From Diadema antillarum (lineage: Eukaryota), in the NCBI RefSeq assembly GCF_040938485.1, contig NW_027271445.1, positions 3,844,001 through 3,908,000 on the forward strand: a stretch of 64,000 bases of DNA, in the 5' to 3' direction. Both the position numbers and the translations under genes were made by a program. The notes under the pieces were generated by a model. That model made no database searches. It was not told where the DNA came from and was given only the letters and a program-made list of their open reading frames with translations. Each line of letters begins with the position of its first letter. Positions within the stretch are counted from its first letter, which is position 1. Shown here one piece after another: positions 8,806-41,100 of the stretch.

Positions 8806-10930
8806 CTCTCTCTCTCTCTCTGTTCTGCCATGGACGTCACTGCCCGTTGGCGATCACTGATGCAGTATGTTTCCGCCATCTCCCTCTATCGTCGCACGAA
8901 TGCAGCAATGTAGATCCTCTCTCGCCGACTAATCCAGCCATTGCAGAAAGGAAAGTGTGTCGCTGTCGTCCACGTGATCTCTTCCCATTCACAAATCCAG
9001 ACAGGACTAGATGCTCTGTTCAGTTTGCCTCTTCCTCACGACATGGCCCAAAAACTGCATCTGGCGTTTCCTGATGGTGGAGAGCAGCTCACGTTCAGCC
9101 GACACCATTTCTAGTACTTCTGTGTTTGATTTTCTTTCCGTCCATGATATTTTCAACATTCGCCTGTAGCACCACATCTCGAAACTTTCTATTCTGTGTC
9201 TCATTGGCTTATTAACTGTCCATGTCTCGGCGCCGTATGTCATAGTTGACCATATGTATGTTTTCAAGAACCGTTTCCTTGTGGCGATGGACAATTTGCG
9301 GTTCGTCATCACCTTGCGCATGTTCTGAAACGCTGTCTTTCCAATGCCAATTCTACGCTTGATTTCTCGTTCTGAACGGCAGTCTGAAGTCAGCAGGCTA
9401 CCGAGGTAATTGAAAGATGACACCTGCTTCAGCTCTTGTCCATTTATCATTATCGAACATCGAGGTGGCTGCGCAGTTTTGCTGAAGACCATGGTTACTG
9501 ATTTCGCGATGTTAATCGATAGCCCCTTTTCCTCGCTTGCTCTGGAGACAACATCCATCAATCCCTGCAACTTCTCTGCACTGTCAGCTAGAATAACCGT
9601 GTCATCAGCGTACCTCATGTTTGTGAGTTGACTGCCTCCGATTGCAAAGCCAGGTAATTCGTCCAATTGTCGCATAATTGACTCTGTGTATAAGTTGAAC
9701 ATGTATGGCGAACCAACACATCCTTGTCGCACACCTCGCTCAATATCCTGCCAATCACCAACATCTCCATCATGCTGTACCGCAGCTGATTGCCTCCAGT
9801 ACAGGTCTGCCAACAACCTTTTATCTTCGTCATCAATGTCTAGCTTGTCGAGTGTCTTGAACAATTCTTCATGTTTAACCTTATCAAACGCCTTCGTGTA
9901 GTCGATAAAACATACATACAGATGTTGCTGCTTCTCTATAGCTCTTTCTGCCAAGCGGCGAATGACGAAGATCGCATTCCGTGTTCCTCTGTCTGGAACA
10001 AATCCATACTGCTGCTGTGAAATCTCATTGCATGTTCGACCTCTTATCCGGTTTATTAGCAAACGAACAAGAATCTTGGTTAGATGGCTCATCAAACTGA
10101 TGGTTCGGTGTTCCTCACATTTGGTAGTTCCTGCTTTCTTCGGTAGAGCAATGAAGATTGATCTACACCAGTCGTCTGGTATATGTCCTTCCCGATATAC
10201 TGCGTTCATCATCTCTGTGACCGTGTCAAGGATTTCGTCTTCTGATGCTTGTAGCATCTCTACCAGTATACCATCCGGTCCTGCAGCCTTTCCGGAAGCG
10301 CTCTTCCATATCGCATTTCTGACCTCATCTTTGGTGAATTCCAGCATCCGACGTTCTCCTGCATTGTCATCCCCATATGTAGGCTGCGGACCTCTATTGT
10401 CAGCGAATAATTGGCCTATGTACTCTCTCCATCTGTCTGATATTGCCGTTTTTTCCATCAAAATTTCACCGCTGTTATCTCGCAGGCAACCGCCGGCAGC
10501 TGACTTTTTCCGCTTTCCAGTCATTTTCTGGATGGAGCTGTGCATGTCGTTATACTTCTTCTCTTCTTCCACTTTCTGGATGTGATCACATTGTGCGTTC
10601 AAAAATTCCTCCTTTGCCCTTCGGCACTCGTATCGCACTTCCCGGTCCAGCTGTTTGTACAACACAGCATCATGGTTTTTTGCTTTTCTTCTCTGATCCA
10701 TTAGTTGAAGGATATCGACAGTCATCCATTTCTGCTTTGCCTGTCTCGGCTGCTCAGGTATTACCTCTTCCGCTGCTTGTACCAAAGCTTCTGTCAGCCT
10801 CATGTTTAATATCTCAGCCTCATCTGATGTCGACTCCCTGTTCAGCAGTTCTCCCACACGCTTTCTATATTGATCAGCTACCGCCGGGTCCGTTCTTAAT
10901 AGATCAAATCGACGTCTTGGCTTTCGTTGC
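8806..10930 (-). mobile_element. 5'-truncated RTE-clade non-LTR retrotransposon (reverse transcriptase)
   Basis: 616-aa ORF 9007-10857 with QYGF...GTRNAIF, FIDYTKAFDKV, GVRQGC, RYADD. A frameshift near 9020 leads into a C-terminal SGFVNGKRSRGRQR...W segment with a stop near 8837. The 3' tail is (GA)n at 8806-8820. No endonuclease domain is present. Confidence 0.92.
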
Positions 10931-14712: not shown

Positions 14713-17700
14713 GTAAAAGTGATAAAAATGCCCGATATATTCATCTTTAACCTATTCAGTAGATTTTCTTATTCTTTGTCTTCATCCTTATTCTTCTACT
14801 TCTAGTTCATTTTTTTTTGTGGGTCCCACACTTTATTAGAATCGCTCTTTTATGGATATCTCAGCCATTTCAAAACCAATTTTTATCAAATAAACATTGA
14901 ATTTCTCATAGAATTGCATGCTCTTTCATATTTCGAATGAGATTTCTTATCATCTCACCTAAAAATGTTAGAAACCTGAAATTAGGTCTCAACTAAAACT
15001 GTACACTCCCTTTAAAACACATCAGCATGAAAAAGCAAAAAGCGTTGTTTTTAACCTAAAATATGGATGCCCAAGGCAAAACGAAATTTACTCGGTGTAC
15101 ATGTATTTGCCGTTTATCCCACCTAATATGGACAATTTTGTCAACGACACCGGCGTTACTGTTCCCATGAGATTGCGCAAGTATTCTACTTTTTTAGAAA
15201 TATGGTTCACTACGTTTTAGAAATATACATACTATGGATACGATAATGTAGTTTCCTATTCGAGTTCATTATTTTTTTTCTTACATCCCCTAAAAGAAAA
15301 TATTTCACAATATAATATTCTATAGATTTTTAACCTGTAACATTTCGAACTTTTTTTTTCATAACGCAGAGCCAATAGGACGGCTGCAGTATTTCATTTA
15401 ATCATGCGAATGTACTTTCCTTCGTCATACAATTTTATATCTATCAAATGGCTTAATGTGACGCCTTATAAATCAGGTCCTGTTGTAAATGTGTGAGGAT
15501 ACATCCTCTTCTTCTCAATGCCGCTTTCACTTTATTATGTACCTTTCGAATATAGAGAATGCAGATGAAAAAATTTGTTTTTTCGTGAAATGATAGGGGA
15601 AAACGTTCTGCAAGCTAGGTCCGTAGGTCTCTTCCGTTGTTCGCTGGTAAATTTCCTGTTGTGCAGCAATGATGGAGTCAGCTATAGCTGACAACGAAAC
15701 CTAATGGTACATTGTTAAACTGGCAAGACACTCTACGCTTGTAAGCACAACGCGGAACTACAGTAGCGAAGTTGGATTTATGCTTATACTGTTATATGTA
15801 AACGCGGATGCTTAACTTTGGATTGTTGGGAATTTTGGGCAAAGTTTGACGAAGAATTTTGTATCTGGTGTGAGCCGATGAGTGCCTCTGCTTTGCGTAT
15901 ATATTCCACTTCACGCCACATCAAGCTAAGTGAACGTAGAATGGAGAAATTAGCTGTTGTCCTATATTACTAATAGTGGAGCGGCATAGCCGAAAAATTG
16001 TGCATTTTGTGATAAAAGCACCAAATTTCGTACACAGGTTGACAATCACGTTCAGATCAAATTTAGATATTGGGCCATCGTAAATAGCGCCCTCAACGTC
16101 CGCGGCAGCCATTTTATAAAATGGCTGCCATAAATGCCATGTTTTCGTAAAATTTACTAATTTTAGGAGAGAAAAGTCAATAAAATTTTTGTTACAAATG
16201 GGAAATTACATTCAAAATAAATCTAGATATCGGGCCGTCGGAAATAGCGCCCTCAACGGCAATAGCAGCCATTTTTCAAAATGGCCGCCATAAATGTCAT
16301 TTCTTCAAAATATTTGCTAACTTCAGAAGGGAAAGCCAGTAAGATTTTGCAAACAAGTGGGAAATTACATTCAAAATTAATCTATTTGGTCATTGTGAAT
16401 TGCGCCCTCAACGTCCATGACAGCCATTTTTCAAAATGGCTGTCTAATGTCTATGGGAAAAGTTAATAAAATTTTTCCCATAAATGTTAATTTCATTCAA
16501 AATGAATCTAGATATTTGGCCATCGGAAATTGCGCCCTCAACGGCCATGGTAGCCTTTTTTTTCAAAATGGCTGCCGCAAATGCCATTTTTTGTTAAAAA
16601 ATGCAAATTTTAGAAGGGAAAGCCAATGGACTTTTTTTTTTTGTAAACAAACTGGAAATTACATCCAAAATAAATCCAGATATTGGGCAATTGAAAATTG
16701 CGCTCTCAATGGCTATGGCAGCCATTTTTTTCCAAATGGGCACCATAAGTGCCATTTTTTCAATTAAAAAACGCTAATTTCAAAAGAAAAGTCAATGAAA
16801 TTTTGGTTATAATAGTTAGGGCATTTTAGAAAATTTCTGGACCATCTGTGAAAAAATTGCTTACCAATAGCTTTCTTCACCAGTGTGTTCATAAAGGTGT
16901 CTACTAACACCTCTCAATTAGTTCCAACCCAAATCCTTGTGGAAAATTCTGGGGAGCCAATCAAAGTTGAGCATCCGGAGGGGGGCGGGGCTAAAATTGA
17001 AAAATATATATTTTTCCCAATATAGGCGTGTGAGATGTCTAACTAGGGGTTTCTGGGGGTGCTGAATCGATTCCAACCATTAGTTTTGAGTAAAAACTAC
17101 TATTTGACAGTAAAATAGACCACGCCTCCTTTTTGCCCCCGCCGAAATACGTAAATATTGGTATTTTTATACATATCTCATTGGGTTGATATAGTGGCTT
17201 TTTAGGGCGAACTGAAAACATTTATGTGCGATGGGAAGCAGTCGTTCCCATTTCTCTTACATCCATTATACTAAATATACCAACATCCGTGTGGAAAAAA
17301 ATGGGGGGGGGGAAGGATAAACCATAGGCAACAAAGGGGGGGGGTCGAGCAATGGGAAAATTTTTTTTTTTCAGTATTAACATCTGAGATGCCTAATTAG
17401 CGTTTCTCGGGGTGCTGAATGGATTCTGAACATTAGTTTTGAGTAAAAACTACTACCTGATCATTAAAATAGGCCACGCCTACTTTTTGCACCCGCCAAA
17501 TCATGTATTATTGGTATTTTGTACGTATCTCAACGAGTTTAAAATTATAGTGAGTTCCTTAGAATGCTGAATTGAGGTCTATCATTGAATTTGAGCTATA
17601 CCCACTCTAAAAACAGTGTGCAAAACACTGCAACATAAGTGTGCAATTGGAAGTAGTCGTTCCCACTTCTCTTACTTCCATTATGCCCCATTATAATCCA

Positions 17701-17744
17701 ACAGAAATGTATCTCAATATTAAAACCTTGGTACTTTACCCAAC

Positions 17745-19290
17745 TCCCGACATCTCCCTCACTGCTCTCATCAGCTGTTTGGTTGATATTCTGGCAAGAG
17801 TTACCACGACATTTGCCGCAAGCAGAAAAATACTTGACTCCTTGCTTTTTACAACAGCACCTAAGTGTGCTACAGTCCCCTCACAGTTGCAGCTGACAAA
17901 CTTCAGAAGATAGTCCTTTGCGATGGGGTCTGTTGAAGGGACCGGTGCGTAACCTTGGTCACTGAGCTTCCATCCGTACTCCAAGATCTCCAATGATGGA
18001 GTTTGCAACATTGGCCAATTTCTGGTTTGGAGATAAGCTCGTAGAGAATGCTGCGCTGCAGCTTCTGTTGTCAGGGGCAGTTTCTCAAGTTTGATGCTAG
18101 CAGCAGCCCGCTTGCTGAAGATGTCAAATGTCAAGTGTCCCATTGCAAGTCTTTGGGTGGTTTTCCATGGAACATGAGCTTAACTAATTCACAGCCAACT
18201 TTGATGATGTCATCTTTCTTGGCTCGGATGTCCAGAAACACATCCATGGCCCTTTCCGCCTTGTCAGTCTCGCAGAGCTTGTTTATCAAAGTTGATTTGC
18301 TGAACCCAGAAATCGCCGACCGTCTGTACAGCCAGAGAAGCTGTGCAAGAAGATCAAATACTTCCTGTAACTCTCTTGGAGGGCCTCCCTGATCTTTGCG
18401 CTATCATAATATGTTTCTTTGGCTGTTTTTATGAGGAAGATGGGGTGGTCTGCAGCATGATGAATCAGCAAAACCATGATGTCGGTGTCCTCAACCCTCA
18501 CCTCAACAGGAGAATCTTTTGCCTCATCTAGAGCTGCCCGGACTATAGCAGTGTCTGCATCATCGTGGCATTGCTGTACACTGATCCCATTTCTACTGAA
18601 TGTCTCAGCAAGCAGCAGAATGAGCTGCACTGGGCCTTGTTGCTCTAAACTGTTGTCGAGGAACTTTTCTCTTGGAACGAGGCTTTTGATGTCTGGGCGA
18701 ATCAGAATGTCGCAGCATGCATTCCTTGCTCGTCTCAGGTGACGATGGTCCTTAGTGGAGCTCCCGTATCCATCAAAGACCACAGTGATTTGGAGAAACT
18801 GGCTCCCCATGGACTCCACAAACTTTAGTTAGCTCTCGACAAATGCCCTTCCAGGTGAGGTTATCCTCCTACTTGAAGTTATGCATGCGGAGCCACCCAC
18901 CATCAATCACCAGACTCGTGCAGGGGGTTTGTTTAACGGGTTCCACAAATGCCTTCAGAAATCTTGCTGGGGCAGCCTTGTCTGGCTTTCGCAACTTCTG
19001 GTCTTTGTCAAATAGAGACACTGGTGTTGGCGTCAACTCAAATCACAGAGCTTCTTTCGTCTTGAATTCACGCTCACTGATGATGATTAGACTGTTGAAG
19101 AGCTTGAGTGAGTCAATAACCAGCTTCTTTCAATTGACTTTGGGTCCACTTCTGAGGCTCTCTAATGACTTCACCTTGTGCTAAGTTTCCATTGAATCAA
19201 GAACCGTTCGTCCATTCATCTTGGCCTGCATGGCTCTGCCAACCTCCTCTGCCTGATCAGCGTTGACTGGGTCCTCTGGAGTGCTGCTGA
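17745..19290 (-). pseudogene. Academ polyprotein C-terminal remnant (XPG/FEN1-like nuclease + Cys8 finger), left arm
   Basis: VNADQAEEVG...FELTPTPVSLF...IDGGW...ITVVFDGY...DDADTAIV...EDTDI...FSGC, with multiple stops and frameshifts. Confidence 0.8.
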
Positions 19291-19297
19291 AGTGCTA

Positions 19298-20563
19298 CCA
19301 AGATGAATGGACGAACTGGTTCTGGATTTGAGTTGACGCCAACACCAGTGTCTCTATTTAACAAAGACCAGAAGTTGCGAAAGCCAGACAAGGCTGCCCT
19401 AGCAAGATTTCTGAAGGCATTTGTGGAACCCATTGAATAAACCCCCTGCACGAGTCTGGTGATTGATGGCGGGTGGCTCTTGCACAACGTCAAATGGGAG
19501 GCTAACCTCACCTGGACGGGCATTGCCAAGAGCTACCTCCAGTTTGTGAAGTCCATGGGGAGCCAGTTTCTCCAAATCACTGTGGTCTTTGATGGATACG
19601 GCAGCTCCACTGAGGACCATGATCACCTGAGACGAACAAAGAATGCATGCTGCGACATTTTGATTCGCCCAGACATCAAAAGCCTCGTTCCAAGAGAAAA
19701 GTTCCACGACAACAAGAGCAACAAGGCCCAGCTCACTCTGCTGCTTGCTGAGACATTTAGTAGAAATGGGATCAGTGTACAACAGTGTCACAATGATGCA
19801 GACACTGCTATAGTTCGGGCAGCTCTAGATGATGAGGCAAAATATTCTCCTGTTGAGGTGAGGGTTGAGGACACCGACATCATGGTTTTGCTGATTCATC
19901 ATGCTGCAAACCATCCCATCTTCCTCACAACAGCCAAAGAAACATCTTATGATATCGCAAAGATCAGGGAGGCCCTCCCAGAGAGATACCAAAAGTATCT
20001 GATCTTCTTGCACAGCTACTCTGGCTGCGATACAGTGTCAGCGATTTCTGGGTTCAGCAAATCAACTTTGATAAACAAGCTCTGCGAGACTGACAAGGCG
20101 GAAAGGGCCGTGGATGTGTTTCTGGACATCATGTTCCATGGAAACCACCCAAAGACTTGGGAGACTTGACATTTGACATCTTCAGCAAGTGGGCTGCTCC
20201 TGGGAGCATCAAAACTGAGAAACTGCCCCTGACAACAGAAGCTGCAACGCAGCATTCTCTACGAGCTTATCTCCAAACCAGAGATTGGCCAATGTTGCAA
20301 ACTCCATCATTGGATGTGTTGGAATACGGATGGAAGCTCGGTGACCAAGATTACGCACCGGTCCCTTCAACAGACCCCATCGCAAAGGACTATCTTCTGA
20401 AGTTTGTCAGGTGCAACTGTGAGGGGACTGCAGCACACTTAGGTGCTGTTGTAAAAAGCAAGGAGTCCAGTATTTTTCTGCTTGCGGCACATGTCATGGT
20501 AACTCTTGCCTGAATATCAACCAAACAGCTGATGAGAGCAGTGAGGGAGATGTCGGGGAGTAG
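19298..20563 (+). pseudogene. Academ polyprotein C-terminal remnant (XPG/FEN1-like nuclease + Cys8 finger), right arm
   Basis: IDGGWLL, VVFDGY, DADTAIV, EDTDI and SGCDTVSAISGFSK (H3TH). After a -1 shift it reads CNCEG/DCSTLRCCCKKQG...SACGTCHGNSCLN. Confidence 0.82.
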
Positions 20564-23500
20564 GGTGAAAAGTAGCATGGTTTTAATATTGAGATACATT
20601 TCTGTTGGATTATAATGGGGCATAATGGAAGTAAGAGAAGTGGGAACGACTACTTCCAATTGCACACTTATGTTGCAGTGTTTTGCACCTTGTTTTTAGA
20701 GTGGGTATAGCTCAAATTCAATGATAGACCTCAATTCAGCATTCTAAAGAACTCACTATAATTACAAACTCATTGAGATACATAAAAAATACCAATAATA
20801 CATTATTCGGCGGGTGCAAGAAGTAGGCATGGCCTATTTTAATGGTCAGGTAGTAGTTTTTACTCAAAACTAATGTTTCGAATCCATTCAGCACCTCCAG
20901 AAACCCATAATTAGACATCTCACTTACTATTAAACAATGAAAAAAATATTTTCCCATTGTTTGACCCCCCCCCCCCCCTTTGTTGCCCAGGTTAAACTGT
21001 CCCCCCCCCCCTGTTTTTTTCCACACGGATGTTGGTTCGAACTCATTGAGAATCAAACATTTAATAAGTAATTACAGCAGAAATAGGATTATATTTGGTG
21101 TAATGGATATAAGAGAAATGGGAACGACTACTTCCCATCGCACATAAATGTTTTCAGTGCACCCTAAAAACCCACTATATCAACCCAATGAGATATGTAT
21201 AAAAATACCAATATTTACGTATTTCGGCGGGGGTAAAAAGGAGGCGTGGCCTATTTTACTGTCAAATAGTAGTTTTTACTCAAAACTAAAGGTTGTAATC
21301 GATTCAGCACCCCCAGAAACCCCTAGTTAGACATCTCACACGCCTATTTTGGGAAAAATATATATGTTTCAATTTTTGCCCCGCCCCCCTCCGGATGCCC
21401 AACTTTGATTGGCTCCCCAGAATTTTCCACAAGGATTTGGGTTGGAACTAATTGAGAGGTGTTAGTAGACACCTTTATGAACACACTGGTGAAGAAAGCT
21501 ATTGGTAAGCAATTTTTTCACAGATGGTCCAGAAATTTTCTAAAATGCCCTAACTATAAATGGGAAATGAGATTTAAAATAAATATCGATATTGGGCCAT
21601 CGGAAATTGTGCCCTCAACGGTCATGACAGCCATTTTTCAAAATGGCCGCCATAAATGCTATATTTTCGAAAAGATTTACTAAAATCAGAAGGGAAAGCC
21701 AACGAGATTTTGCAAACAGGTGGGAAAGTACATTCAAAAGTAAACTTATTGGGCCATTGCAAATTGCCCCCTCAATGGCCATTCCAGCCATTTTTCAAAA
21801 TGGCCACCATGAATGTCTTTTTTTTCCCACAAAGGTGGAAAATTACATTCAAACTGAATTTGATAAAAGGCCATCCAAAGGTGCACCCTCAACAGCCATA
21901 GCAGCCAAGTTTTAAAACAGCTGCCATGGATGCCCCCCTTGTTTTGCTTTGTTTTTTGCAAAAATTTGCTGATGTCAGAAGGAAAAGTCAATAAGACTTT
22001 GCAAACAAGTTGAAAATTGTGCTCAAGAAATAAATTTAAGTGTAAAGTCTTCTTAGAAGGCGCCCTCAAGGGCCATGCTGAGCGCTATGGATGTCTGCTT
22101 CTTTCTTTTTTCTGTTCTTTTCTGGAAAGATTTGCCAATTTCATGGAGAAAACCAATGAAATTTGTACATACCTTTATGTTTAAAATCATATTCACAAGA
22201 AAATAATATATGAGTTCATTACACCGTCCATGGCAGCCATTTTCCAAATGGCCACTATAGATGCTATTTATTTCTTGAAAATATGATAATGCCACAAGAA
22301 GACAATATGATTTCTTGTGCAAATTGACAAAAGACATTCAAATAAATTCAAGTTTGAATTTGAATTTAAATTTGAAATGAAGATATTGAGCCACCATTTA
22401 AACATCGTCCTAACGACTATGGCAGCTCCTTGGCAAAATGGCTTCCACACACTCCTTATTCTTATTTGCTTATTCCAGAAGGAGAAAGCAATAGAATACT
22501 GCTAAACAGCCATTATATCTAATGCAATCTGGTGTTCAAAGAAATCTAAATGTTAAAAAAGGTTTCATTGATGGGTTAGTTCTAAATTCATGTTTTCAGT
22601 TTAGTCCTAATTGCAGTATTTCGTGTGTGACGGCTAACAGTATGGATATCAAAGGTATGTGTTTTATGGAAACATAGCAAATAGATTAACTTTTATCGTA
22701 AATGAAAGGCCATTTTTTCGTATCTGTTTTAAGAATATTTAGGAAGTTACATTTTAGAATAGATACACGTCATATATCCCATATATTCAATGATATGGTG
22801 TTACTGTCAAAGTTAACACATGGCGCCATTATCCCTGGATATTCATATTACTCTTTTTCGGAAATCTTTTATGTTTGCCACCTAAAATATGCATTCATCA
22901 TTGGTGAGATATATGCTAAGCATTTGCCTTGTTTATTTCAAATGTTCCTCAAATGATTTCCGTAGCATCATATTTCAGATTATATAATGTCTCTGTGAGT
23001 ATTCTACTGTCCTCTCCTTCTGAAGTTAAAGCAAATTTTCAAGACAAAAAAAGAAGAAGAGTGTATTGTAGCAATTTTGACAAATAGCTGAAATAGCCAT
23101 TGAGAACAAAGTTTATGATGGCCCAATGTCTAAACTTCTTTATATGTATTGTCAACTTGCGCCCAAAAAAAAAAAAAAAATGTTTACTGTCTTCTTCCGG
23201 CATTAGGACATCTTCATTAAAGAAAAATGGCATCTATGACAGCCATTTTGGAAAATGGCTGCAATTACCGTTATAAGCATTTTTTTTTCTTGAAAATTTG
23301 CGAAGGAACCATTTCTAGAGTTAATGCAATCTAGATATATTGTTTGATTTTAAACGTGATTTTCAATTTATGTACACATTTGTTGACTTTTCTTTCTGAA
23401 ATTACAATTTTTTAAAACAAAATGATTATGACAATGGCAGCAATTTTGGTATATGGCGGCCATGGCCGTTGAGGGTAGTATTATAATAATCTATTACAAA

Positions 23501-25158
23501 TATTATTTCACACATAATTTTCAAATTGTGCGCAAAATCTTATTGACTTTTCCTTTTGTGAAATCAGGAAATAAAAGAAAATGGAATCCATGGTGGCCAT
23601 TTTGAAAATGGCTGCAATGGCCATTGAGGGCGCTATTTACAATAATGTAATACATAGGCGCAAGATATATTGCAAACGAAATTTTTAAATTGAGTGCAAG
23701 ATCTCACTGTCTTTTCCTTCTGGAATTAGTAAATTCAGAGAAAAAGGTGGTATTTATGGCAGCCAATTTTAAACATGGTTGCCATTGGCGCTGAGGGCGC
23801 AATTTGAGATGACCCAACATCTAAATATATTTTGAATTTTATTTTCAACTTGTTTACAAAATCTTGATTTTCCCTTCTGAAATTTTTACTTTTTTGGGAA
23901 AAATTGCGTTTATGGCGACCATTTATGAAAAAAATGGCTGCCATGACCGTTAGGGGGCGCAATTTGCGATGGCCCAATATCTGAATTTATTTCAAATGTT
24001 ATATCCCACTCGTTTGCAATATCTTATTGATTTTCCCTTCTGAAATGTGTAAAATTTATGAAAACTGGCATTTATGGCGGCCTTTTTGAAAAATCCCTGC
24101 CATAGCCGTTGAGGGCGCAATTTGCGATGGCCCAATATCTGAACTTTTTTTATTGCTATGTCCGACACGTTTCAAAATCTTATTGATTTTCCCTTCGGAA
24201 ATTTGTAAATTTTTACTAAAAAATGGCATTTAAGGCGGCCATTTTGAAAAATGGCTGCTATGGCCATTGAGGGCGCTATTTTCGATGGCCCAATATCTTA
24301 ATTTATCTTAAATGTTATTTTCCACTTGTTTGCAAAATCTCACTGATTTTCCCTTCCGAACTTTGTAATCTTTTGCGAAAAATGGCATTAATGGCGGCCA
24401 TTTTGAAAAATGGCTGCCATTACCGTTGAGGGCGTAATTTACGGTGGCCCAATATCTAAATTTATTTTGAATGTTATTTTCCACCCGTTTGCAAAATCTT
24501 ATTGATTTTCCCTTCTGAAATTTGTAAATTTTTACGAAAATGGCATTTATGGCGGCCATTTTGAAAAATGGCTGCCATGGCCGTTGAGGGCGCTATTTTC
24601 GATGGCCCAATATCTGAATTTATTTCTAATGTAATTGTCAACATGTGTGCGAAATTTGGTGCTTTTATCATAAAATGCACAATTCCTCTCATTTTTCAAG
24701 CTATGCCGCTCTACTATAAAGGGCCTATCACGTTCATTGTGATAATTAATTGCTGTGACACCCAACGTCAGTGTACGCACGTTCGACGTGTGTCTGCATG
24801 AGGGAAAGTGTGGCCAATTTTGTCTGTCCTCCAGTCAACGATGTGCGCACAGCGTGGACTATTACAGGAAATGACATTGGAATCAATGATTTAGGTGATA
24901 TTTTAAGAAACTGTGAGTATGTGATAAGCTTGTTGGTGACTACTGAAAACTCGCAGCACACGGTGTGATCACACTGTCTTTTCCTCTGGTGGTTTTCTTC
25001 AGACTCGTGAAACTTGAGGTTTGTCTCTGAGTTGACCTTCCAACTATGGTCATGGTCTTAAGTACTTGACCGTTCAGTAATTCGCCGAGGAAAAACACTT
25101 TTATATTCATCAATCTAGTTCTTTCTCTTCACGGAAAGGGGATTACAAAGAAGACAGG

Positions 25159-35100: not shown

Positions 35101-38100
35101 AACCGGAGGAAGTCTTCTTGTCGAGGACATGTAGGAACGGGATGGAGTAGTCTTCTTCGACCTCCATGGTGAACTTGATGAGAGGATGCTGTTGGTCGAG
35201 GTTGTTGAGGAACAGATCAGGTTCTGATTGGCTGTGGGGCCAGATGACGAAGGTGTCGTCGATGTAGCGGAGTCATAGGGAAGGACGAGAGGGAGAAGAC
35301 CGGAGAGCTTTGGTTTCGAAATGTTCCATGAAGATGCCGTTCCTTTCAGTTGCTTGTAGTAGTCAGTGCGCCATTTGAAGAAGTTGGAGTTGAGGCAGGT
35401 GAGTATGGGGTCGTGGATTTGATCATGGGTGAGTTTGGTTCGTGTTTGGAGGTTTGGGTCGGAGATGAGTCGTTGTTTGATGATCTCGATTTCTTCGTTG
35501 ACGACGACGCTGGTAAAGAGGGAGACGACATCGAAACTGACTAGTAGGTCGGAGGTTAAAGCAAGATGGCGAGATGTCTTGCTGTGTTGTAGCATGGGGA
35601 TTATCGGGTGGCGATTATGGGTCGAAGTGGAATGAGAGACATGTGTATCTTGGATTGGCCGAAGAGGATGGGGCAAGTTGCGGAGGCAGAGCGGAGTTGG
35701 AAGTAATGTGGTTTGGGTAGAGCGTCGGATCGATGGAGAGAGAGAGTTATAGTTTCTGGTTGATTCAACTTTCTGTTGTAGGGTCTCTCTTAAATTTTCG
35801 AGTAGGTCTTGGCGTTATCAAGTAGGTCTTGAATCTTGCAGTCGTAGTCTTGCTTGTCCATGACGACAGTAGCGTTGCCTTTGTCAGCTTGTAGGATGTG
35901 GATGGTCTTGTTTTGGCGGAGGTCTTTGATGGTTGTGTGTTCTTTATTGGTGCTGTTGGGCTTCGGTGGTTTGGCGTCAAAAAGGGCTTGGGATACTTTG
36001 ATTCGGATGTTGTCGGCGGTTGCCTACGTGAGGAATCGAAGTTTTGGTTCTACTTGTTGGATGATCTCCGAGAAAGGGACTTTCTTTGGAGCTACGGCGA
36101 AGTTCAAGCCCAGGGATAAGACGTTGTGTTCGGTTTCGATGAGCCGATGTTGGCTGAGGTTGATGGCCATGTCCTTGGTTAGTGGGAAGGAAGGTCAGTT
36201 GTTGGTAGGGTGGCTTCTTTGGGTATAATGTTTGTCGAATTTCCTGATCTGCTTGAGTTGGGTGGAATGATAAAGCTTGCATGCGTTGTCTGAGCTGAAT
36301 ATCTTTACTTTTCGTAAGTCGTCTAGTTTGAATTGTTGGGCGAGCTGGGATTGAGACAACGATACGGTTGAGTCGATGGTGTGTAGCTGGTTTCTGGTGT
36401 GTGCGATGCGACGGGTGAGGGCTGCTCCGGCGTGGTGTAGGATGCGCTGGGCTTTGGGGTGTCATTGGACGACTTGAGTTGAATGGGGATGATGTGAGAT
36501 GATGTGAGAGTCTCGGCAGCGTTTGGGGAAGGCGAGATGGTTGGTGAGTTTAGCGGCTTTGGCTCGGTTGCGTTGGAGAAGTCTAGCGGTGCGTTAAGTA
36601 GGCTCCGATCCCCTTAGAGCTGAAATTAGATGATCTTTGAAGGATGGGTTTGAGTGATGGTGTAGATAATGGATAGTGGGTGTGCGGTTAGCCATGTGGT
36701 AATCCTGAAATGAACCGTAGGAAGAAGAGGTAGGAGATTATGAGGACTCCTGAGGACGAACAGTCAAGCTGTCTTTGTACAGTCCTTTTCAGGACTACCA
36801 CATGGTTATCCGCAAATTCAGTATCCGTTAATGACGAAGACGTAGCAGACATAAAACGTTTTGTAACGTCAATTGATGTTTTGAAAACGTTTTCCAAAAA
36901 CCTGTGCCTTGTAACTCCCAACTTTGACGTTATAATGTACGTTTTAAAAACGTCCATTTGATATGGAGACGTATGGAAGGTCACTGAAAAAAAAAAACCA
37001 TTTAGGAAACGTGCTTAAAACGTTATGTGTTTGCTAGGTATAGGATCGTGATTCTGCCTCAGAATTTTTTTAGGTAAACGCACCCTTCGTGACTGCCTCA
37101 CTTTTTCCCCCAGCAATGGGGAAACCCCCGATATATTGATAAGAGTCTGTGGGCATTAATCTGGAGTCTAGTGGAGAGATGTAATTTTTACAGCGTAACA
37201 ATTTGTATTCCTCGCTCTTCAAAATCTCAAGATTTCATAGATTATCTAGGGTGATGAATCACAGTTTCCTCTTCCTCGCCTTTCAGAAAGACCAGCCTGA
37301 GAGCCAAGGACCAGATACTACTGACGGCATCGGTCTCAATCCATCTGAAATGGGTAGGTGTGTCATGGTAGCTTATAGGTTATCATGGTATAGTGGGTAG
37401 GTGTGTCATGGAAGTAAGTAGGTGTGTCATAGTAGTGGGTAGGTGTGCCTCGGTGATGAGTACCGGTAGTTGTGTGTCGGTAGCGGGTAGATCTTTGTCA
37501 GTAGTGGGTAGTTGTGCCTCACTAGTGAGGAGGTGTGTCACGGTAGTGGATAAGTGTGTCTGTTTATTGTGCGTATGTGTCTTGTTTGAGGATCTGGTGT
37601 CTCGTTGTTGGGTAGATGTGTCTTGGTAGTAGGTAGGTGTGTCTAGCTAAGAATATGGCTAGAATCAACGGGTCTCTTGGGACAGTGGGATCAGTATCAG
37701 ACTCATTGTACCTTGTGGGGATGTCGACCGTGGTAGTAAAACGATCATCACAAGCAAAATGAGAATTTGTTGTTTTTGGGAGGGAGTATGTATAAATATA
37801 GGACAACTAATTTGAAGTGCCTTTCACACGATGTTCCCATAGAGTCTCTTGTGGGTCCCTCCCCTTCATCGGGCGCCGCGTCACCTTCCATCGAGCCATC
37901 CATGCCACAGCAGATCGCCAGCCTGGTGGAGAGAATGCTGAAGGAACAGGTGCGGCTGAAGCAATGCGGGGCAGTGGGCGGGGCAGTGGGCGGTGCCAAT
38001 CCTGACTCTTCATCAGCTGGAGAGGTCTCTTTGAGTATATGGGACTTCGCTGGGCACGATGTCTATTACACAACCCACCAGGTTGGTTTATTGATATCGA

Positions 38101-41100
38101 TAAAATCTTTAGCAGAACTGCATGTATATGGAATTCTTGCTGATTATTGTGTCATTAGCCTTGTAACTTGTTGTGTACTATTATTTTTTTTTATTTTCTT
38201 ACCACAATGGATGATCACGAGGATTGGATAAATGTGTAAAATTGAAGAAAATGAGTCCTATGGAGGGATGTCGAATGAGTAAATGAAGTAAAGATGTGAA
38301 CACACTACCATATCTCGTAAAACAAACAGCCAAAGAAATCATTTAGATCGTTAAATTTCTAAAAGTCCGGATTCGGAAAAGGCTCCCTGCTCTTACGACT
38401 TAACAAGATTAAAAACCCGTAATGCTCCAAGTCATCCTAATAGATCAGGGCACAGCAAGAAATTATCTTAACGTTTTTTGTCAGGTTACGATTTCCATTG
38501 GACTGTTTATTTGTTTCTTCTTGGCTCCGGCAAGTGAACGATGTCTTAATTTCCTTTGATTTCCACATTGTAGTGTTTTTCTGACACACAAAACTTACAA
38601 TATCCTTTTCTGAAGATGATACCAGTGACTATAAACGGGATTTGCCTTCGATGTGGAAAGTAGAAAGTGGCACGAGTATCTTGCAACCATTAAAGCGCAG
38701 TAAGGACTTAGAAAGTGGATACTTCTTTTTGAAACTGTTGTCCTTTACAATAGCAGAATATGTAGACTATTGTTGATTTGTTTCTCTTTGTGTTTCTATC
38801 AGGTATTTTTGTCATGGCGTGCAGTCTACGTCGTGGTCTTTGATCTGAGTCACGACCTTCACTCGGTAGTCCCACCTGAGGCTAGAGACGAAATCTACGA
38901 AATGGTGGGCGATCACAATTTGAAATCTCCTGTCTCGTAAGAAATGTTTTGATTGAAATAATGAAGAAACGATATAAGGCATTGATTGACATATTGTATG
39001 AACACGAAATACGATTCTATTGATCTTTGTTTCTCAGGCCAAACAGAATTCGAAGTCTGAGCTGACATGTCTTCAATTCATCACGTTCTGGCTGAACTCC
39101 ATCTTCGCTCACGCTGTAGCACCCTCTTCGGTTACCAAAAACAGTACTTGCAAGACGCACCAGAAATCACCCCCTATATTCATCGTGGGGACACACAAAC
39201 AAAGTCTAAGCGGAGATGCCAAGGCAAGAGAGAAAAAGGTTAGAAAAAAGTTTCTATTTATATCTTGTCGTCGCCCTAAAGCGAATGTTTCATAAAAGAC
39301 CACAGATTTTTATCTCGCATTTTCTTTTTAGTAAAAACTACACATTCCTTAAACTTGTTTAAGGATGATTTCATTTCTTCTGCATTCTAAAGAAGTCATG
39401 ACGAGGGTGTTTGTTGTGTTGAAGGGTTAACCATGTTCTTCGAGTGCACGTACAGGAGAGTGAATATCAATTAGTTCCGCTCTTCTAGCGGAGCGCCCCT
39501 CCGCAGCGTCTCCGATCGTTGCCGATGGGTCGTCATCGTTCTCTGCAAGGTTGTTTGGATTTCTCGGAGACGTTACGGACAAAGTTTAGTCTCCGCGACG
39601 TGGCCATAACTGAGGACACGTCACAGAGACGTCGCAGAGACCAGCGACTGTTGGAAAGTAGAAAATGTGTCCGAAAAAAAAATAGATGTGTTCGATTCTC
39701 CCGAGACTCCCCGCAGACCAAGCTAGTCTCCAGGAAGACGTCTCCTCAACGAACGGAGACCTGACTCACCACCAGGTTGCCGCCTCGTCTCCATGCCAAT
39801 AAGTTACCCATTTGACTTTCTGCATCGTCCCATATTATGAGATTAAAATGTTATTTTGCTTCTATGTTCAAAGTGACTATGATATAAAAAGTGAACTCTA
39901 ATAAACACATTTGCAAAGTTTCTTGATTTCTTGTATATTATGTGTTGCCAGGTGGAAGCCGCCTTCAAGGATATCCGGAAGACGATACAGAAGAAGCCGT
40001 ACGAGAATCACGTGGTACCTCGCTACTACGCTGTAGACAATAGTCTCGGGGAGGATGATAAGGAGGTGGGAATAAACTCTAACCCTGACCCTAACCCTAG
40101 CACTGATAATCTATCATTAACCAACGAACGCGTTATAAAGACAGGGGGACACAGACGAGTGAATAATGCTATTAATTTGAATTCTGTCTAAAATTAGAAA
40201 GGGGCTATTGAGAGGCATTTTGGTACACATTTTTGTGTGTACTTTTGTGCTTTTAAACAGTAATGCCCTATTTTTCTGCAAGAAAAGCTGACAAGTCTAA
40301 GGCACCATTGCACATCACACATCACATATATGATATTATAAGATGGACTTTAGAATCTCTGCAATCTGATTGGTCAGATATCATGCATTGATTTTGTACT
40401 GATGCACTCTGAGCCATGCGTCCGGTAGAATCCGACCGCATGGCCGTGCGCGACCGGTAATATCCGAAAGCAGGGCTTAAGCCTTGTACAGTGTTGTAGG
40501 TGTACCGGACGCATGATGGGGGAAAAAGATTGAATTTCATGAATTTTATGGACCCATTTTATAACACAAATGACACACAGGTCTATTTCGTAGATCGGTG
40601 AGAATTGGATGCTCTCGTCTAACTTTAGAAACATTCTAATGCCCAATCTCTGCGCTCGTGGGTTTAAACAGTTCCAAAATTAAACTCTCGCATCCAGTTA
40701 TCAACGATCGACTCTGTCCTGTGCATCATTTACAACAAACACTATTAAGTCCTGAAATTGTGTTTAACAACATTTACGATTGATGGCGGCTGCGAATTTA
40801 TTGTGTTGTAGATGTACCAAGTCTTCGATCCCACAAGCCACCGGTTCTAACACAGAATGTTATCATAACATGTGAATCTTTTGTGAATTCCCAGATCGTT
40901 GCTCTGCGGGAACACATAGAGCGAGTGGCAAAGGAAGAGCCGTACATGGGTGAGAACATGCCGATTAAATATCTTCTCTTCGAAGAGGCTCTCGCGGTCA
41001 ACAAAATCAACTTCTTGTCCCTCGATCAGGTATGCTAGGGTTATGCTGCTGCTCTTCACTATCCAGTTTTCTTAAGCTCAAGAGTAGCTCTTGACTCTCA

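What the first reader, a model, noticed from the sequence alone, without database searches (positions are those of the whole stretch)
16813..21556. A 4.7-kb fold-back Academ made of two 3' halves that transposed as a unit
Seen: left arm 16813-~19224 is the inverse of right arm 19298-21556, with a ~73-bp loop. Both arms encode the XPG nuclease and Cys8 finger end of the protein reading outward, and the DDE transposase half is absent. The termini are the same end used twice (TAGTTAGGGCATTTTAG). A 3-bp TAA duplication flanks the element, and the host repeat reads through seamlessly when it is removed (TTTTGGTTA-TAA-ATGGGAAAT, compare 16186-16206). Known: AcademX elements encode transposase, XPG and a Cys8 finger, have YR..YR termini and make 3-4-bp TSDs. 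Inference: one end duplicated in inverted orientation was enough for mobilisation in trans. If transcribed it would form ~2 kb of dsRNA, a possible small-RNA source inside an immune-type locus.
Basis: partly seen in the sequence, partly recalled or inferred. Interest (0 to 1): 0.75.

Follow-up and report, generated by a model that had tools for sequence, protein, structure and literature searches.

The report
Fold-back copy of an Academ-type transposon
This is a real 4.7-kb mobile element built from two mirror-image copies of the tail end of a transposase-nuclease gene. It has recently spread to at least 14 places in this genome, and similar structures are already known from other transposon families.

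Summary
Window 16813-21556 is a 4744-bp fold-back with arms about 94% complementary. It is flanked by a 3-bp TAA duplication and sits inside a ~160-bp satellite unit that reads straight through once the element is removed.

It is not an assembly artefact. The same central junction occurs at 15 or more other loci (about 14 independent insertions), each with different flanks and its own 3-bp duplication. One copy at another locus is 99.9% identical.

The source family is a 7.27-kb element present in two copies that are 99.6% identical. It has ~750-bp terminal inverted repeats and one spliced gene. That gene fuses a transposase (weak RNase H-like signal) to a well-supported FEN/XPG-type nuclease and a Cys-rich tail. 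This architecture and the 3-bp duplications match what is described for AcademX. Homology to Repbase Academ transposases could not be tested.

Both arms carry only frameshifted remnants of the nuclease half.

- Both ends of the autonomous element are already identical over the first 100 nt, so "same end used twice" explains nothing special.
- The arm-specific mutations are shared by all copies, so the arms diverged before the family amplified.
- The right arm carries a 157-bp deletion.

The double-stranded-RNA idea remains untested. Interest is modest.

The parts
16810..16812 (.). Left target-site duplication, TAA
   Evidence: Read directly. It matches 21557-21559.
16813..21556 (.). Whole fold-back non-autonomous element, 4744 bp
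   Evidence: In coordinates of the 7268-bp autonomous relative it reads [7268->4837] + 6 nt + [~4902->4927] + [5079->7268].
16813..17279 (+). Outer terminal inverted repeat, left. It is the best conserved part of the region that matches the ~750-bp repeat of the autonomous relative.
   Evidence: 97% complementary to 21090-21556. The first 100 nt are 98% identical to both ends of L031 and the first 60 nt are 100% identical.
16813..19291 (-). Long arm: 3' 2.4 kb of the parental element, with the gene remnant reading leftward
   Evidence: 87% identical to L031 parent 7268->4837.
17746..19291 (-). Pseudogene remnant of residues 211-720 of the last exon (linker, FEN/XPG-like nuclease, start of the Cys-rich tail)
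   Evidence: tblastn finds five frame segments with 5 stops. ORFs are listed.
19049..19206 (.). Part of the long arm with no partner in the short arm (157-bp deletion in the short arm, bounded by a GATT microhomology)
19227..19297 (.). Loop of the fold-back: parental sequence to 19291, then 6 nt (GTGCTA) of uncertain origin
   Evidence: The junction is identical in 12 other copies.
19298..19320 (+). Short inverted patch, the inverse of 19203-19226. It is the innermost piece of the short arm.
19321..21556 (+). Short arm: parental 5079->7268, with the gene remnant reading rightward
   Evidence: 85% identical to L031.
19327..20560 (+). Pseudogene remnant of residues 294-721 of the last exon
   Evidence: tblastn finds three frame segments with 1 stop.
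21090..21556 (-). Outer terminal inverted repeat, right
21557..21559 (.). Right target-site duplication, TAA
16059..16809 (.). Host ~160-bp satellite array that received the insertion. It continues after 21560.
   Evidence: Tandem Repeats Finder. The reconstituted empty site aligns across the joint to 10 other units.

Best explanation
Window 16813-21556 is one copy of a non-autonomous fold-back DNA transposon.

Origin. It arose once, when the 3' 2.4 kb of an autonomous transposase-XPG-nuclease transposon (AcademX-type by architecture) was duplicated in inverted orientation in place of the 5' 4.8 kb. The most likely route is snap-back or template switching during repair of a break, but that step is inferred. 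The two arms then diverged by about 6%.

Amplification. The element later spread by cut-and-paste transposition to at least 14 loci. Each insertion made a 3-bp target duplication.

Mobilisation. The element encodes nothing itself. It is presumably moved in trans by the protein of the 7.27-kb relatives on contigs C666 and C561, whose termini it shares. This step is also inferred.

This copy landed in a unit of a 160-bp satellite.
For: - Same junction elsewhere. The 251-nt junction is found whole at 15 or more other places at 95-100% identity. Twelve copies show the identical junction string.
- Full-length copies. They are 96-98.4% identical to the window copy, and L011 is 99.9% identical with unrelated flanks.
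- Target duplications. All are 3 bp and varied in sequence: TAA, ATA, CTA, AAA, AGG, TCA, TGA, GAC, CAC, TTT, GTT, TAC.
- Simple insertion. The empty site is reconstituted within the satellite.
- Autonomous relative. L031 1056-8323 and L032 are 99.6% identical to each other and have different flanks and duplications. Their terminal inverted repeats are ~750 bp with two ~400-bp subrepeats. ORFs of 578 and 721 aa are joined by a ~110-nt GT-AG intron, because homologues from other organisms align without a gap across it.
- Nuclease. A profile of homologues hits human EXO1 with the catalytic acidic motifs aligned (E 0.04). In the AlphaFold model, residues 300-655 have pLDDT ~90, and all top Foldseek hits are T5 FEN, Rad2, EXO1, FEN1 and XPG (E ~1e-6, probability 1.0).
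- Shared termini. The first 60 nt are 100% identical and the first 100 nt 98% identical to L031.
- Single origin. The long arms and the short arms of six copies form two sister clades with 100/97 support.
- Literature. AcademX makes 3-4-bp duplications and carries a nuclease (PMC10045372). Academ RNase H domains have no Pfam match (PMC5751038), which fits the blank Pfam scans.
Against: - Homology to curated Academ transposases was not tested, because Repbase and the Yuan-Wessler alignments are not available here.
- The RNase H-like fold of the transposase part is only weakly supported. Foldseek found nothing below E 0.1. VIA-align gave Z 6-7.5 to retroviral integrase cores, which is within the background range.
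- L031 is only 85-87% identical to the arms, so it is a relative and not the direct parent.
- Trans-mobilisation is inferred from shared termini alone.
- No long read was available to span this particular copy.
- The mechanism of the inverted duplication is inferred from junction anatomy only.
Confidence: 0.85

Rival explanations
1. Assembly artefact: a chimeric palindrome created by fold-back long reads or a mis-join, not present in the genome.
For: One sister copy (L011, C1301) ends at a contig end inside the element, so the assembler does struggle with these structures. No long read spanning this copy could be examined, since only short Logan contigs were available.
Against: - The arms are only ~94% alike, whereas artefactual palindromes are near-perfect.
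- The same complex junction and the same 157-bp arm deletion are assembled at 15 or more loci on different contigs.
- A 3-bp duplication flanks the whole unit here and in the other copies.
- A 108-nt contig from a public run crosses the left flank/element boundary without a mismatch.
Confidence: 0.02
2. Two independent 5'-truncated copies inserted or recombined head-to-head at this locus, rather than one composite element that moves as a unit.
For: Arm divergence of ~6% could suggest two different source copies.
Against: - The junction is identical in at least 12 other copies with unrelated flanks.
- Duplications flank the outer ends only.
- The two arm types are sister clades, closer to each other than to any other family member sampled.
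Confidence: 0.03
3. Same structure and history, but the family belongs to a cut-and-paste superfamily other than Academ that also makes 3-bp duplications (PIF/Harbinger or CACTA-like), or to an undescribed one that has captured an XPG-like nuclease.
For: - Superfamily membership by transposase homology was not tested.
- The transposase fold signal is weak.
- Pfam gives nothing except one distant homologue that hits DUF6589.
Against: - There is no hit to the Pfam families of Harbinger or CACTA transposases.
- Duplications are not restricted to TWA, and the termini are not CACTA.
- A transposase-plus-nuclease element with 3-4-bp duplications is what is described for AcademX (PMC10045372).
- Feature similarity to a Basidiomycota DUF6589 cluster fits the reported abundance of Academ in Pucciniomycotina (PMC5751038). 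This is only a lead.
Confidence: 0.1
4. Beyond being a transposon copy, the fold-back is a functional hairpin-RNA locus that feeds a small-RNA pathway.
For: An RNA crossing the centre would fold into a near-perfect long hairpin: -494 kcal/mol for 851 nt, z = -30 against shuffles. With ~14 or more similar copies, any such RNA would target the autonomous element's nuclease exon.
Against: - There is no evidence of transcription. No listed holder among the public runs is on record as RNA.
- The element sits in a satellite array with no identified promoter.
- The folding potential follows trivially from the structure.
Confidence: 0.15

Closest known systems
AcademX lineage of the Academ superfamily (Kapitonov & Jurka 2010, Repbase Reports; Kojima 2020, Mob DNA 11:15, as cited in PMC10045372)
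   Same: - Duplications are 3 bp, within the 3-4 bp described for AcademX.
- The autonomous relative encodes a transposase fused to an XPG/FEN-type nuclease.
- The transposase has no Pfam model, as reported for Academ (PMC5751038).
- At 7.3 kb it is in the size range of curated Academ elements (mean 5.6 kb in bivalves, PMC10294476).
   Different: The window copy is a non-coding fold-back lacking the transposase half. I found no published description of such Academ derivatives, though the two primary Academ papers were not readable here. Homology to curated Academ transposases was not tested.
Galileo (P superfamily) '2RT' copies with extended or recombinant terminal inverted repeats in Drosophila mojavensis (PMC3573991)
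   Same: [quoted passage not shown]
- Non-autonomous copies have lengthened their inverted repeats by recruiting internal sequence.
- Recombination or break repair is proposed as the cause.
   Different: - The superfamily differs (P, with a THAP transposase).
- Galileo makes 7-bp target duplications (from my own knowledge, not checked here).
- Here the recruited sequence is 1.5 kb of coding sequence, and almost nothing unique remains in the centre.
Classical Foldback elements and Tetris of Drosophila (PMC4079207)
   Same: Near-palindromic mobile elements with a very small unique centre. Insertion here is in, or next to, satellite DNA.
   Different: Their arms are built of short tandem subrepeats, not gene remnants, and their autonomous partners are poorly defined. 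This element's arms are traceable base by base to a coding parent.
Another palindromic Academ-like element noted by this scan in the same genome (s1-215072)
   Same: Two head-to-head remnants of the nuclease end around a short loop. It is multi-copy and non-coding.
   Different: It is a different locus, its size differs (1.9 kb noted) and its loop is 16 nt. I did not compare sequences, so I cannot say whether it is the same family.

Membership tests
AcademX (Academ superfamily) | Target-site duplication of 3 or 4 bp | tested here: met
   A 3-bp duplication flanks the window copy and 16 other copies of the family, including both autonomous ones. The criterion comes from PMC10045372.
AcademX (Academ superfamily) | Autonomous element encodes a nuclease of the XPG/FEN type together with the transposase | tested here: met
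   Tested on relative L031. The profile hits EXO1 with the catalytic motifs aligned. Foldseek top hits are all FEN, Rad2, EXO1 and XPG at E ~1e-6. The nuclease lies in the same spliced gene as the transposase exon. The window copy keeps only broken remnants.
AcademX (Academ superfamily) | Transposase core homologous to the Academ DDE/RNase H domain (Yuan & Wessler 2011; Repbase) | not testable with these tools
   No Repbase or Academ alignment is available, and both primary papers are not held. Indirect evidence only: Pfam is blank, as expected for Academ (PMC5751038). Asp291, Asp294 and Asp459 are invariant in 23 homologues.
AcademX (Academ superfamily) | RNase H-like catalytic fold of the transposase | tested here: inconclusive
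   Model pLDDT is 75. Foldseek found nothing below E 0.1. VIA-align placed residues 284-482 on retroviral integrase cores, the TerL nuclease and Cas12 RuvC at Z 6-7.5, which is within background for this tool.
   L031 ends with a stretch of 10 Cys and 1 His within 33 residues. Teleost homologues are labelled Tesmin/TSO1-like CXC. The termini are TA...TA. Whether these features define the family could not be checked in the literature. In the window copy the motif is frameshifted in both arms.
Drosophila-type Foldback elements | Arms composed of arrays of short tandem subrepeats, unrelated to coding sequence | tested here: not met
   About 1.5 kb of each arm is a remnant of the nuclease exon. 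Only the outer ~750 bp has two ~400-bp subrepeats. The resemblance is structural only.
PIF/Harbinger (another superfamily with 3-bp duplications) | TWA target preference and a DDE_Tnp_4-type transposase | tested here: not met
   The duplications include AGG, GAC, CAC and GTT. There are no Pfam transposase hits.

The most novel reading that the evidence does not exclude
Transposase-XPG (AcademX-type) elements may be intrinsically prone to producing 3'-end fold-backs.

In this one family, the 5' 4.4 kb survives only in the two autonomous copies. The 3' nuclease part is present in 40 or more arms. At least two, and probably three or four, separate inverted-duplication events all copied the 3' end. 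Another family in the same genome is reported to do the same.

This could reflect a directional step in transposition or repair that involves the element's own flap/hairpin nuclease. The resulting hairpin loci would be matched exactly to the nuclease exon and could act as self-generated small-RNA repressors.
Probability: 0.12. Interest if true: 0.55.

Novelty: new member of a known kind. Interest (0 to 1): 0.3.

Why it matters
Academ is among the least studied cut-and-paste superfamilies. This family offers a clean, datable example: two near-identical autonomous copies, and fold-back derivatives whose origin, junction and amplification can be traced base by base. That makes it usable for asking what the fused XPG-type nuclease does in transposition, and whether fold-back derivatives silence their parents.

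For genome annotation the practical points are these:
- Such 4.7-kb near-palindromes are genuine. They break contigs, since one sister copy ends a contig.
- They should be masked as transposons, not read as genes.

Nothing here suggests a host function, and the phenomenon itself (inverted repeats lengthened by recruiting internal sequence) is already documented for Galileo.

Tried and rejected
- Pfam scans of all arm ORFs, of the four L031 ORFs and of 40 homologues gave no meaningful family. The only hit was one distant homologue matching DUF6589.
- PDB sequence searches: the single sequence gave nothing and the transposase profile gave nothing.
- Foldseek on the transposase model gave no significant match. 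VIA-align gave only background-level RNase H-like hits.
- The primary Academ papers (Kojima 2020; Yuan & Wessler 2011) are not held. The first literature search was swamped by the word 'academic'.
- Reads: all runs are short Logan contigs, so they cannot span the palindrome or show expression.
- Contigs that join 16807/16809 to 21555/21558, and a loose end at 16812, look like the empty site. They have only 21-26 nt on the shorter side and lie in a highly repeated satellite, so I do not count them as evidence of insertion polymorphism.
- L011 was considered as an allelic haplotig of the window. This was rejected because its 881-nt flank has no match in the window.
- L031 was considered as the direct parent. 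This was rejected because it is only 85-87% identical to the arms.
- I tried to derive the window-type junction from the second fold-back lineage (junctions at parent 4457/4584) by simple deletions. It does not work, and the tree shows the L033 arms are sisters of each other, so it is a separate event.
- The spliced full-length protein was not joined.
Full report
**1. The observation**

The inverted-repeat search over 16000-22500 returns a collinear series of arm pairs. They run from 16812-17279/21090-21557 (468 nt, 97% complementary) inward to 18890-19044/19325-19479 (96%). A global arm-to-arm alignment gives 93.9% identity over 2215 nt.

The element begins TAGTTAGGGCATTTTAG at 16813 and ends with the exact reverse complement at 21556. 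TAA stands at 16810-16812 and again at 21557-21559.

The flanks belong to a ~160-bp satellite. I joined 100 nt of left flank (with one TAA) to 100 nt of right flank. This reconstructed empty site aligns straight across the joint to ten other satellite units in the window.

**2. It is real and it moved as a unit**

The 251-nt central junction (19150-19400) occurs whole at 15 or more other places in the 1.75-Gb assembly, at 95-100% identity. After fetching these loci:

- Five are full-length copies collinear with the window element, and several more carry secondary deletions or duplications.
- Twelve show the same junction string.
- Pairwise identity among copies is 96-98.4%.
- The copy on C1301 differs from the window copy at about 5 positions in 3730 nt (99.87%). 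Its 881-nt flank has no match in the window, so it is a separate and very recent insertion.
- Every copy with both ends has its own 3-bp duplication: ATA, CTA, AAA, AGG, TCA, TAC and others.
- Two pairs of loci share flanks (L021/L022 and L033/L034). I count each pair as one insertion.

An assembly chimera or a local head-to-head accident cannot produce this pattern. Public runs gave only short contigs. One 108-nt contig crosses the left boundary (16733-16840) without a mismatch.

**3. Where it comes from**

About 25 further places match the junction query only up to window position 19291. Two of them (C666 = L031, C561 = L032) are 7.27-kb elements. They are 99.6% identical to each other, have different flanks, and have duplications TGA and GAC. 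Their features are:

- Terminal inverted repeats of ~750 bp. The outer 322 bp are 96% complementary, and each repeat holds two ~400-bp subrepeats.
- Four same-strand ORFs, the last two of 578 and 721 aa.
- Homologues from other organisms align across the gap between these two ORFs without losing residues. The gap begins GT and ends AG, so it is a ~110-nt intron and the gene is a single spliced unit. Each was searched by reference.

In the coordinates of this 7268-bp relative, the window element reads [7268->4837], then 6 nt, then [~4902->4927], then [5079->7268]. The long arm therefore stops at residue ~210 of the last exon. The loop is about 65 nt of parental sequence plus 6 nt of uncertain origin. 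The short arm carries a 157-bp deletion bounded by a 4-nt GATT microhomology.

The transposase exon and the 5' 1.5 kb occur only in the two autonomous copies. The nuclease part occurs in 40 or more arms, which is a lower bound.

**4. What the gene is**

Pfam recognises nothing in any ORF. This matches the published statement that Academ RNase H-like domains have no Pfam similarity (PMC5751038).

*The last exon.*
- A 17-sequence profile finds human EXO1 in the PDB (E 0.04). The alignment covers 227 columns and lines up the conserved acidic motifs.
- The AlphaFold model is confident over residues 300-655 (pLDDT ~90).
- Its Foldseek hits are uniformly flap-endonuclease superfamily: T5 FEN, yeast Rad2, EXO1, FEN1 and human XPG (E ~1e-6, probability 1.0).
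- The protein ends in a stretch with 10 Cys and 1 His. Some teleost homologues are labelled Tesmin/TSO1-like CXC.

*The 578-aa exon.*
- The model has pLDDT 75.
- Foldseek finds nothing significant.
- VIA-align puts residues 1-80 on winged-helix domains, and residues 284-482 on retroviral integrase cores, the TerL nuclease and Cas12 RuvC, at Z 6-7.5. This is suggestive of an RNase H-like fold but within the tool's background.
- Asp291, Asp294 and Asp459 are invariant in 23 homologues. A nearly invariant Glu lies at residue 114 of the next exon. A DDE triad is my inference.
- One distant homologue hits DUF6589, and the Atlas feature search also lists a Basidiomycota DUF6589 cluster. This is a lead only.

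The genome holds several other families with 31-39% identical transposase parts in long open frames.

**5. Classification**

A transposase combined with an XPG-type nuclease, plus 3-bp duplications, is what PMC10045372 (citing Kojima 2020) gives for AcademX. The defining homology to curated Academ transposases could not be tested. I therefore file the family as AcademX-type by architecture, with about 10% left for another or an undescribed superfamily.

**6. History**

I built a tree of a 1.2-kb segment present in both arms.

- All long arms of six window-type copies fall in one clade, and all short arms fall in another. The two clades are sisters (100/97), excluding the autonomous copies and the other fold-backs.
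- So the inverted duplication happened once. The arms then diverged (about 4% in this segment, 6% overall). Only afterwards did the composite element amplify, since copies differ by 2-4%.
- The two arms of L033, which has a different centre (junctions at parent 4584/4457), are sisters of each other. That is a separate fold-back event.
- L030/L038 and L036 have further junction types.

All events duplicated the 3' end.

**7. How it works**

*Shown:*
- The composite structure.
- The shared junction.
- Per-copy 3-bp duplications.
- Loss of all coding capacity: 5 and 3 frame segments with stops, and the Cys-rich motif cut by the same frameshift in both arms.
- Termini identical to the autonomous relatives: first 60 nt 100%, first 100 nt 98%.

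*Inferred:*
- Mobilisation in trans by the protein of the two autonomous copies.
- Origin by snap-back or template switching during double-strand-break repair, suggested by the short loop, the few filler nucleotides and a microhomology-bounded deletion.

The two ends of the autonomous element are themselves 100% identical over the first 100 nt and about 90-94% over the next 300.

**8. The double-stranded-RNA idea**

An RNA crossing the centre would fold into a near-perfect hairpin: -494 kcal/mol for 851 nt, z = -30. That follows from the structure and says nothing about expression. No listed holder among the public runs is on record as RNA, so the idea is untested.

The 'immune-type locus' context amounts to a Death-domain ORF at 46454-46891 and a weak Roc-like ORF at 37767-38231. 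The element itself lies in satellite DNA.

**9. Comparison and verdict**

Lengthening of terminal inverted repeats by recruiting internal sequence, in a family whose autonomous copies already have long, internally repetitive repeats, is documented for Galileo of the P superfamily (PMC3573991). Fold-back transposons next to satellites are known from Drosophila (PMC4079207).

Earlier notes of this scan report Academ-type elements as common in this genome, and another palindromic derivative. I did not test those notes.

The finding is correct and well described, but it is a new member of a known kind. Its main value is as a clean, young system for studying Academ transposition and the role of the fused nuclease.

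Noticed in passing
window 16059-16812, 21560-~21950 and 23434-24655: A ~160-bp satellite flanks the element. The same satellite lies in inverted orientation about 2 kb downstream (5.8 units of 158 bp at 23712-24636), so the host region is itself an inverted pair of arrays.
   Followed up: partly
window 9007-10857 (-): A 616-aa ORF with a reverse-transcriptase domain (PF00078, E 4e-38). It is a retrotransposon copy unrelated to the finding.
   Followed up: no
window 46454-46891 (+) and 37767-38231 (+): A Death-domain ORF (PF00531, E 6e-14) and a weak Roc-GTPase-like ORF (E 8e-4). The region 34-38 kb has a strong GC skew (+0.3).
   Followed up: no
L014 (G000:C614) 562-760: This sister copy carries a tandem duplication of its terminal ~199 bp. 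The 3-bp duplication (AGG) fits the outer copy, so the duplication of the end either preceded the insertion or occurred within the element.
   Followed up: partly
L021/L022 (C1034 vs C4) and L033/L034 (C616 vs C41): Pairs of copies on different contigs share the same flanking sequence. They are segmental duplications or uncollapsed haplotigs in the assembly.
   Followed up: no
L011 (G000:C1301:254182-257908): A copy 99.87% identical to the window copy but with unrelated flanks ends exactly at a contig end. This shows very recent transposition, and it shows that these near-palindromes break contigs.
   Followed up: partly
L031 about 2775-2855: An ~80-nt stretch in the 5' part of the autonomous element is 80-85% identical to a 42-bp-period minisatellite found in long arrays on many contigs (394 matches).
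   Followed up: no
L031 5262-7424 (protein): The closest named protein is an uncharacterised Myxine glutinosa protein at 88% identity. Other hits are in teleosts, a coral, a rotifer and a priapulid. Either the host is close to hagfish or the family spreads horizontally. Runs holding the element are labelled with four coded organisms and 'marine metagenome'.
   Followed up: no
G000: C425:580125-581555, C149:346261-347691, C1671:132437-141668, C492:3700295-3701752 and others: Several other families have transposase parts 31-39% identical to this one, inside open frames of 1000-1500 aa. These are further, possibly intact, Academ-type elements in the genome.
   Followed up: no
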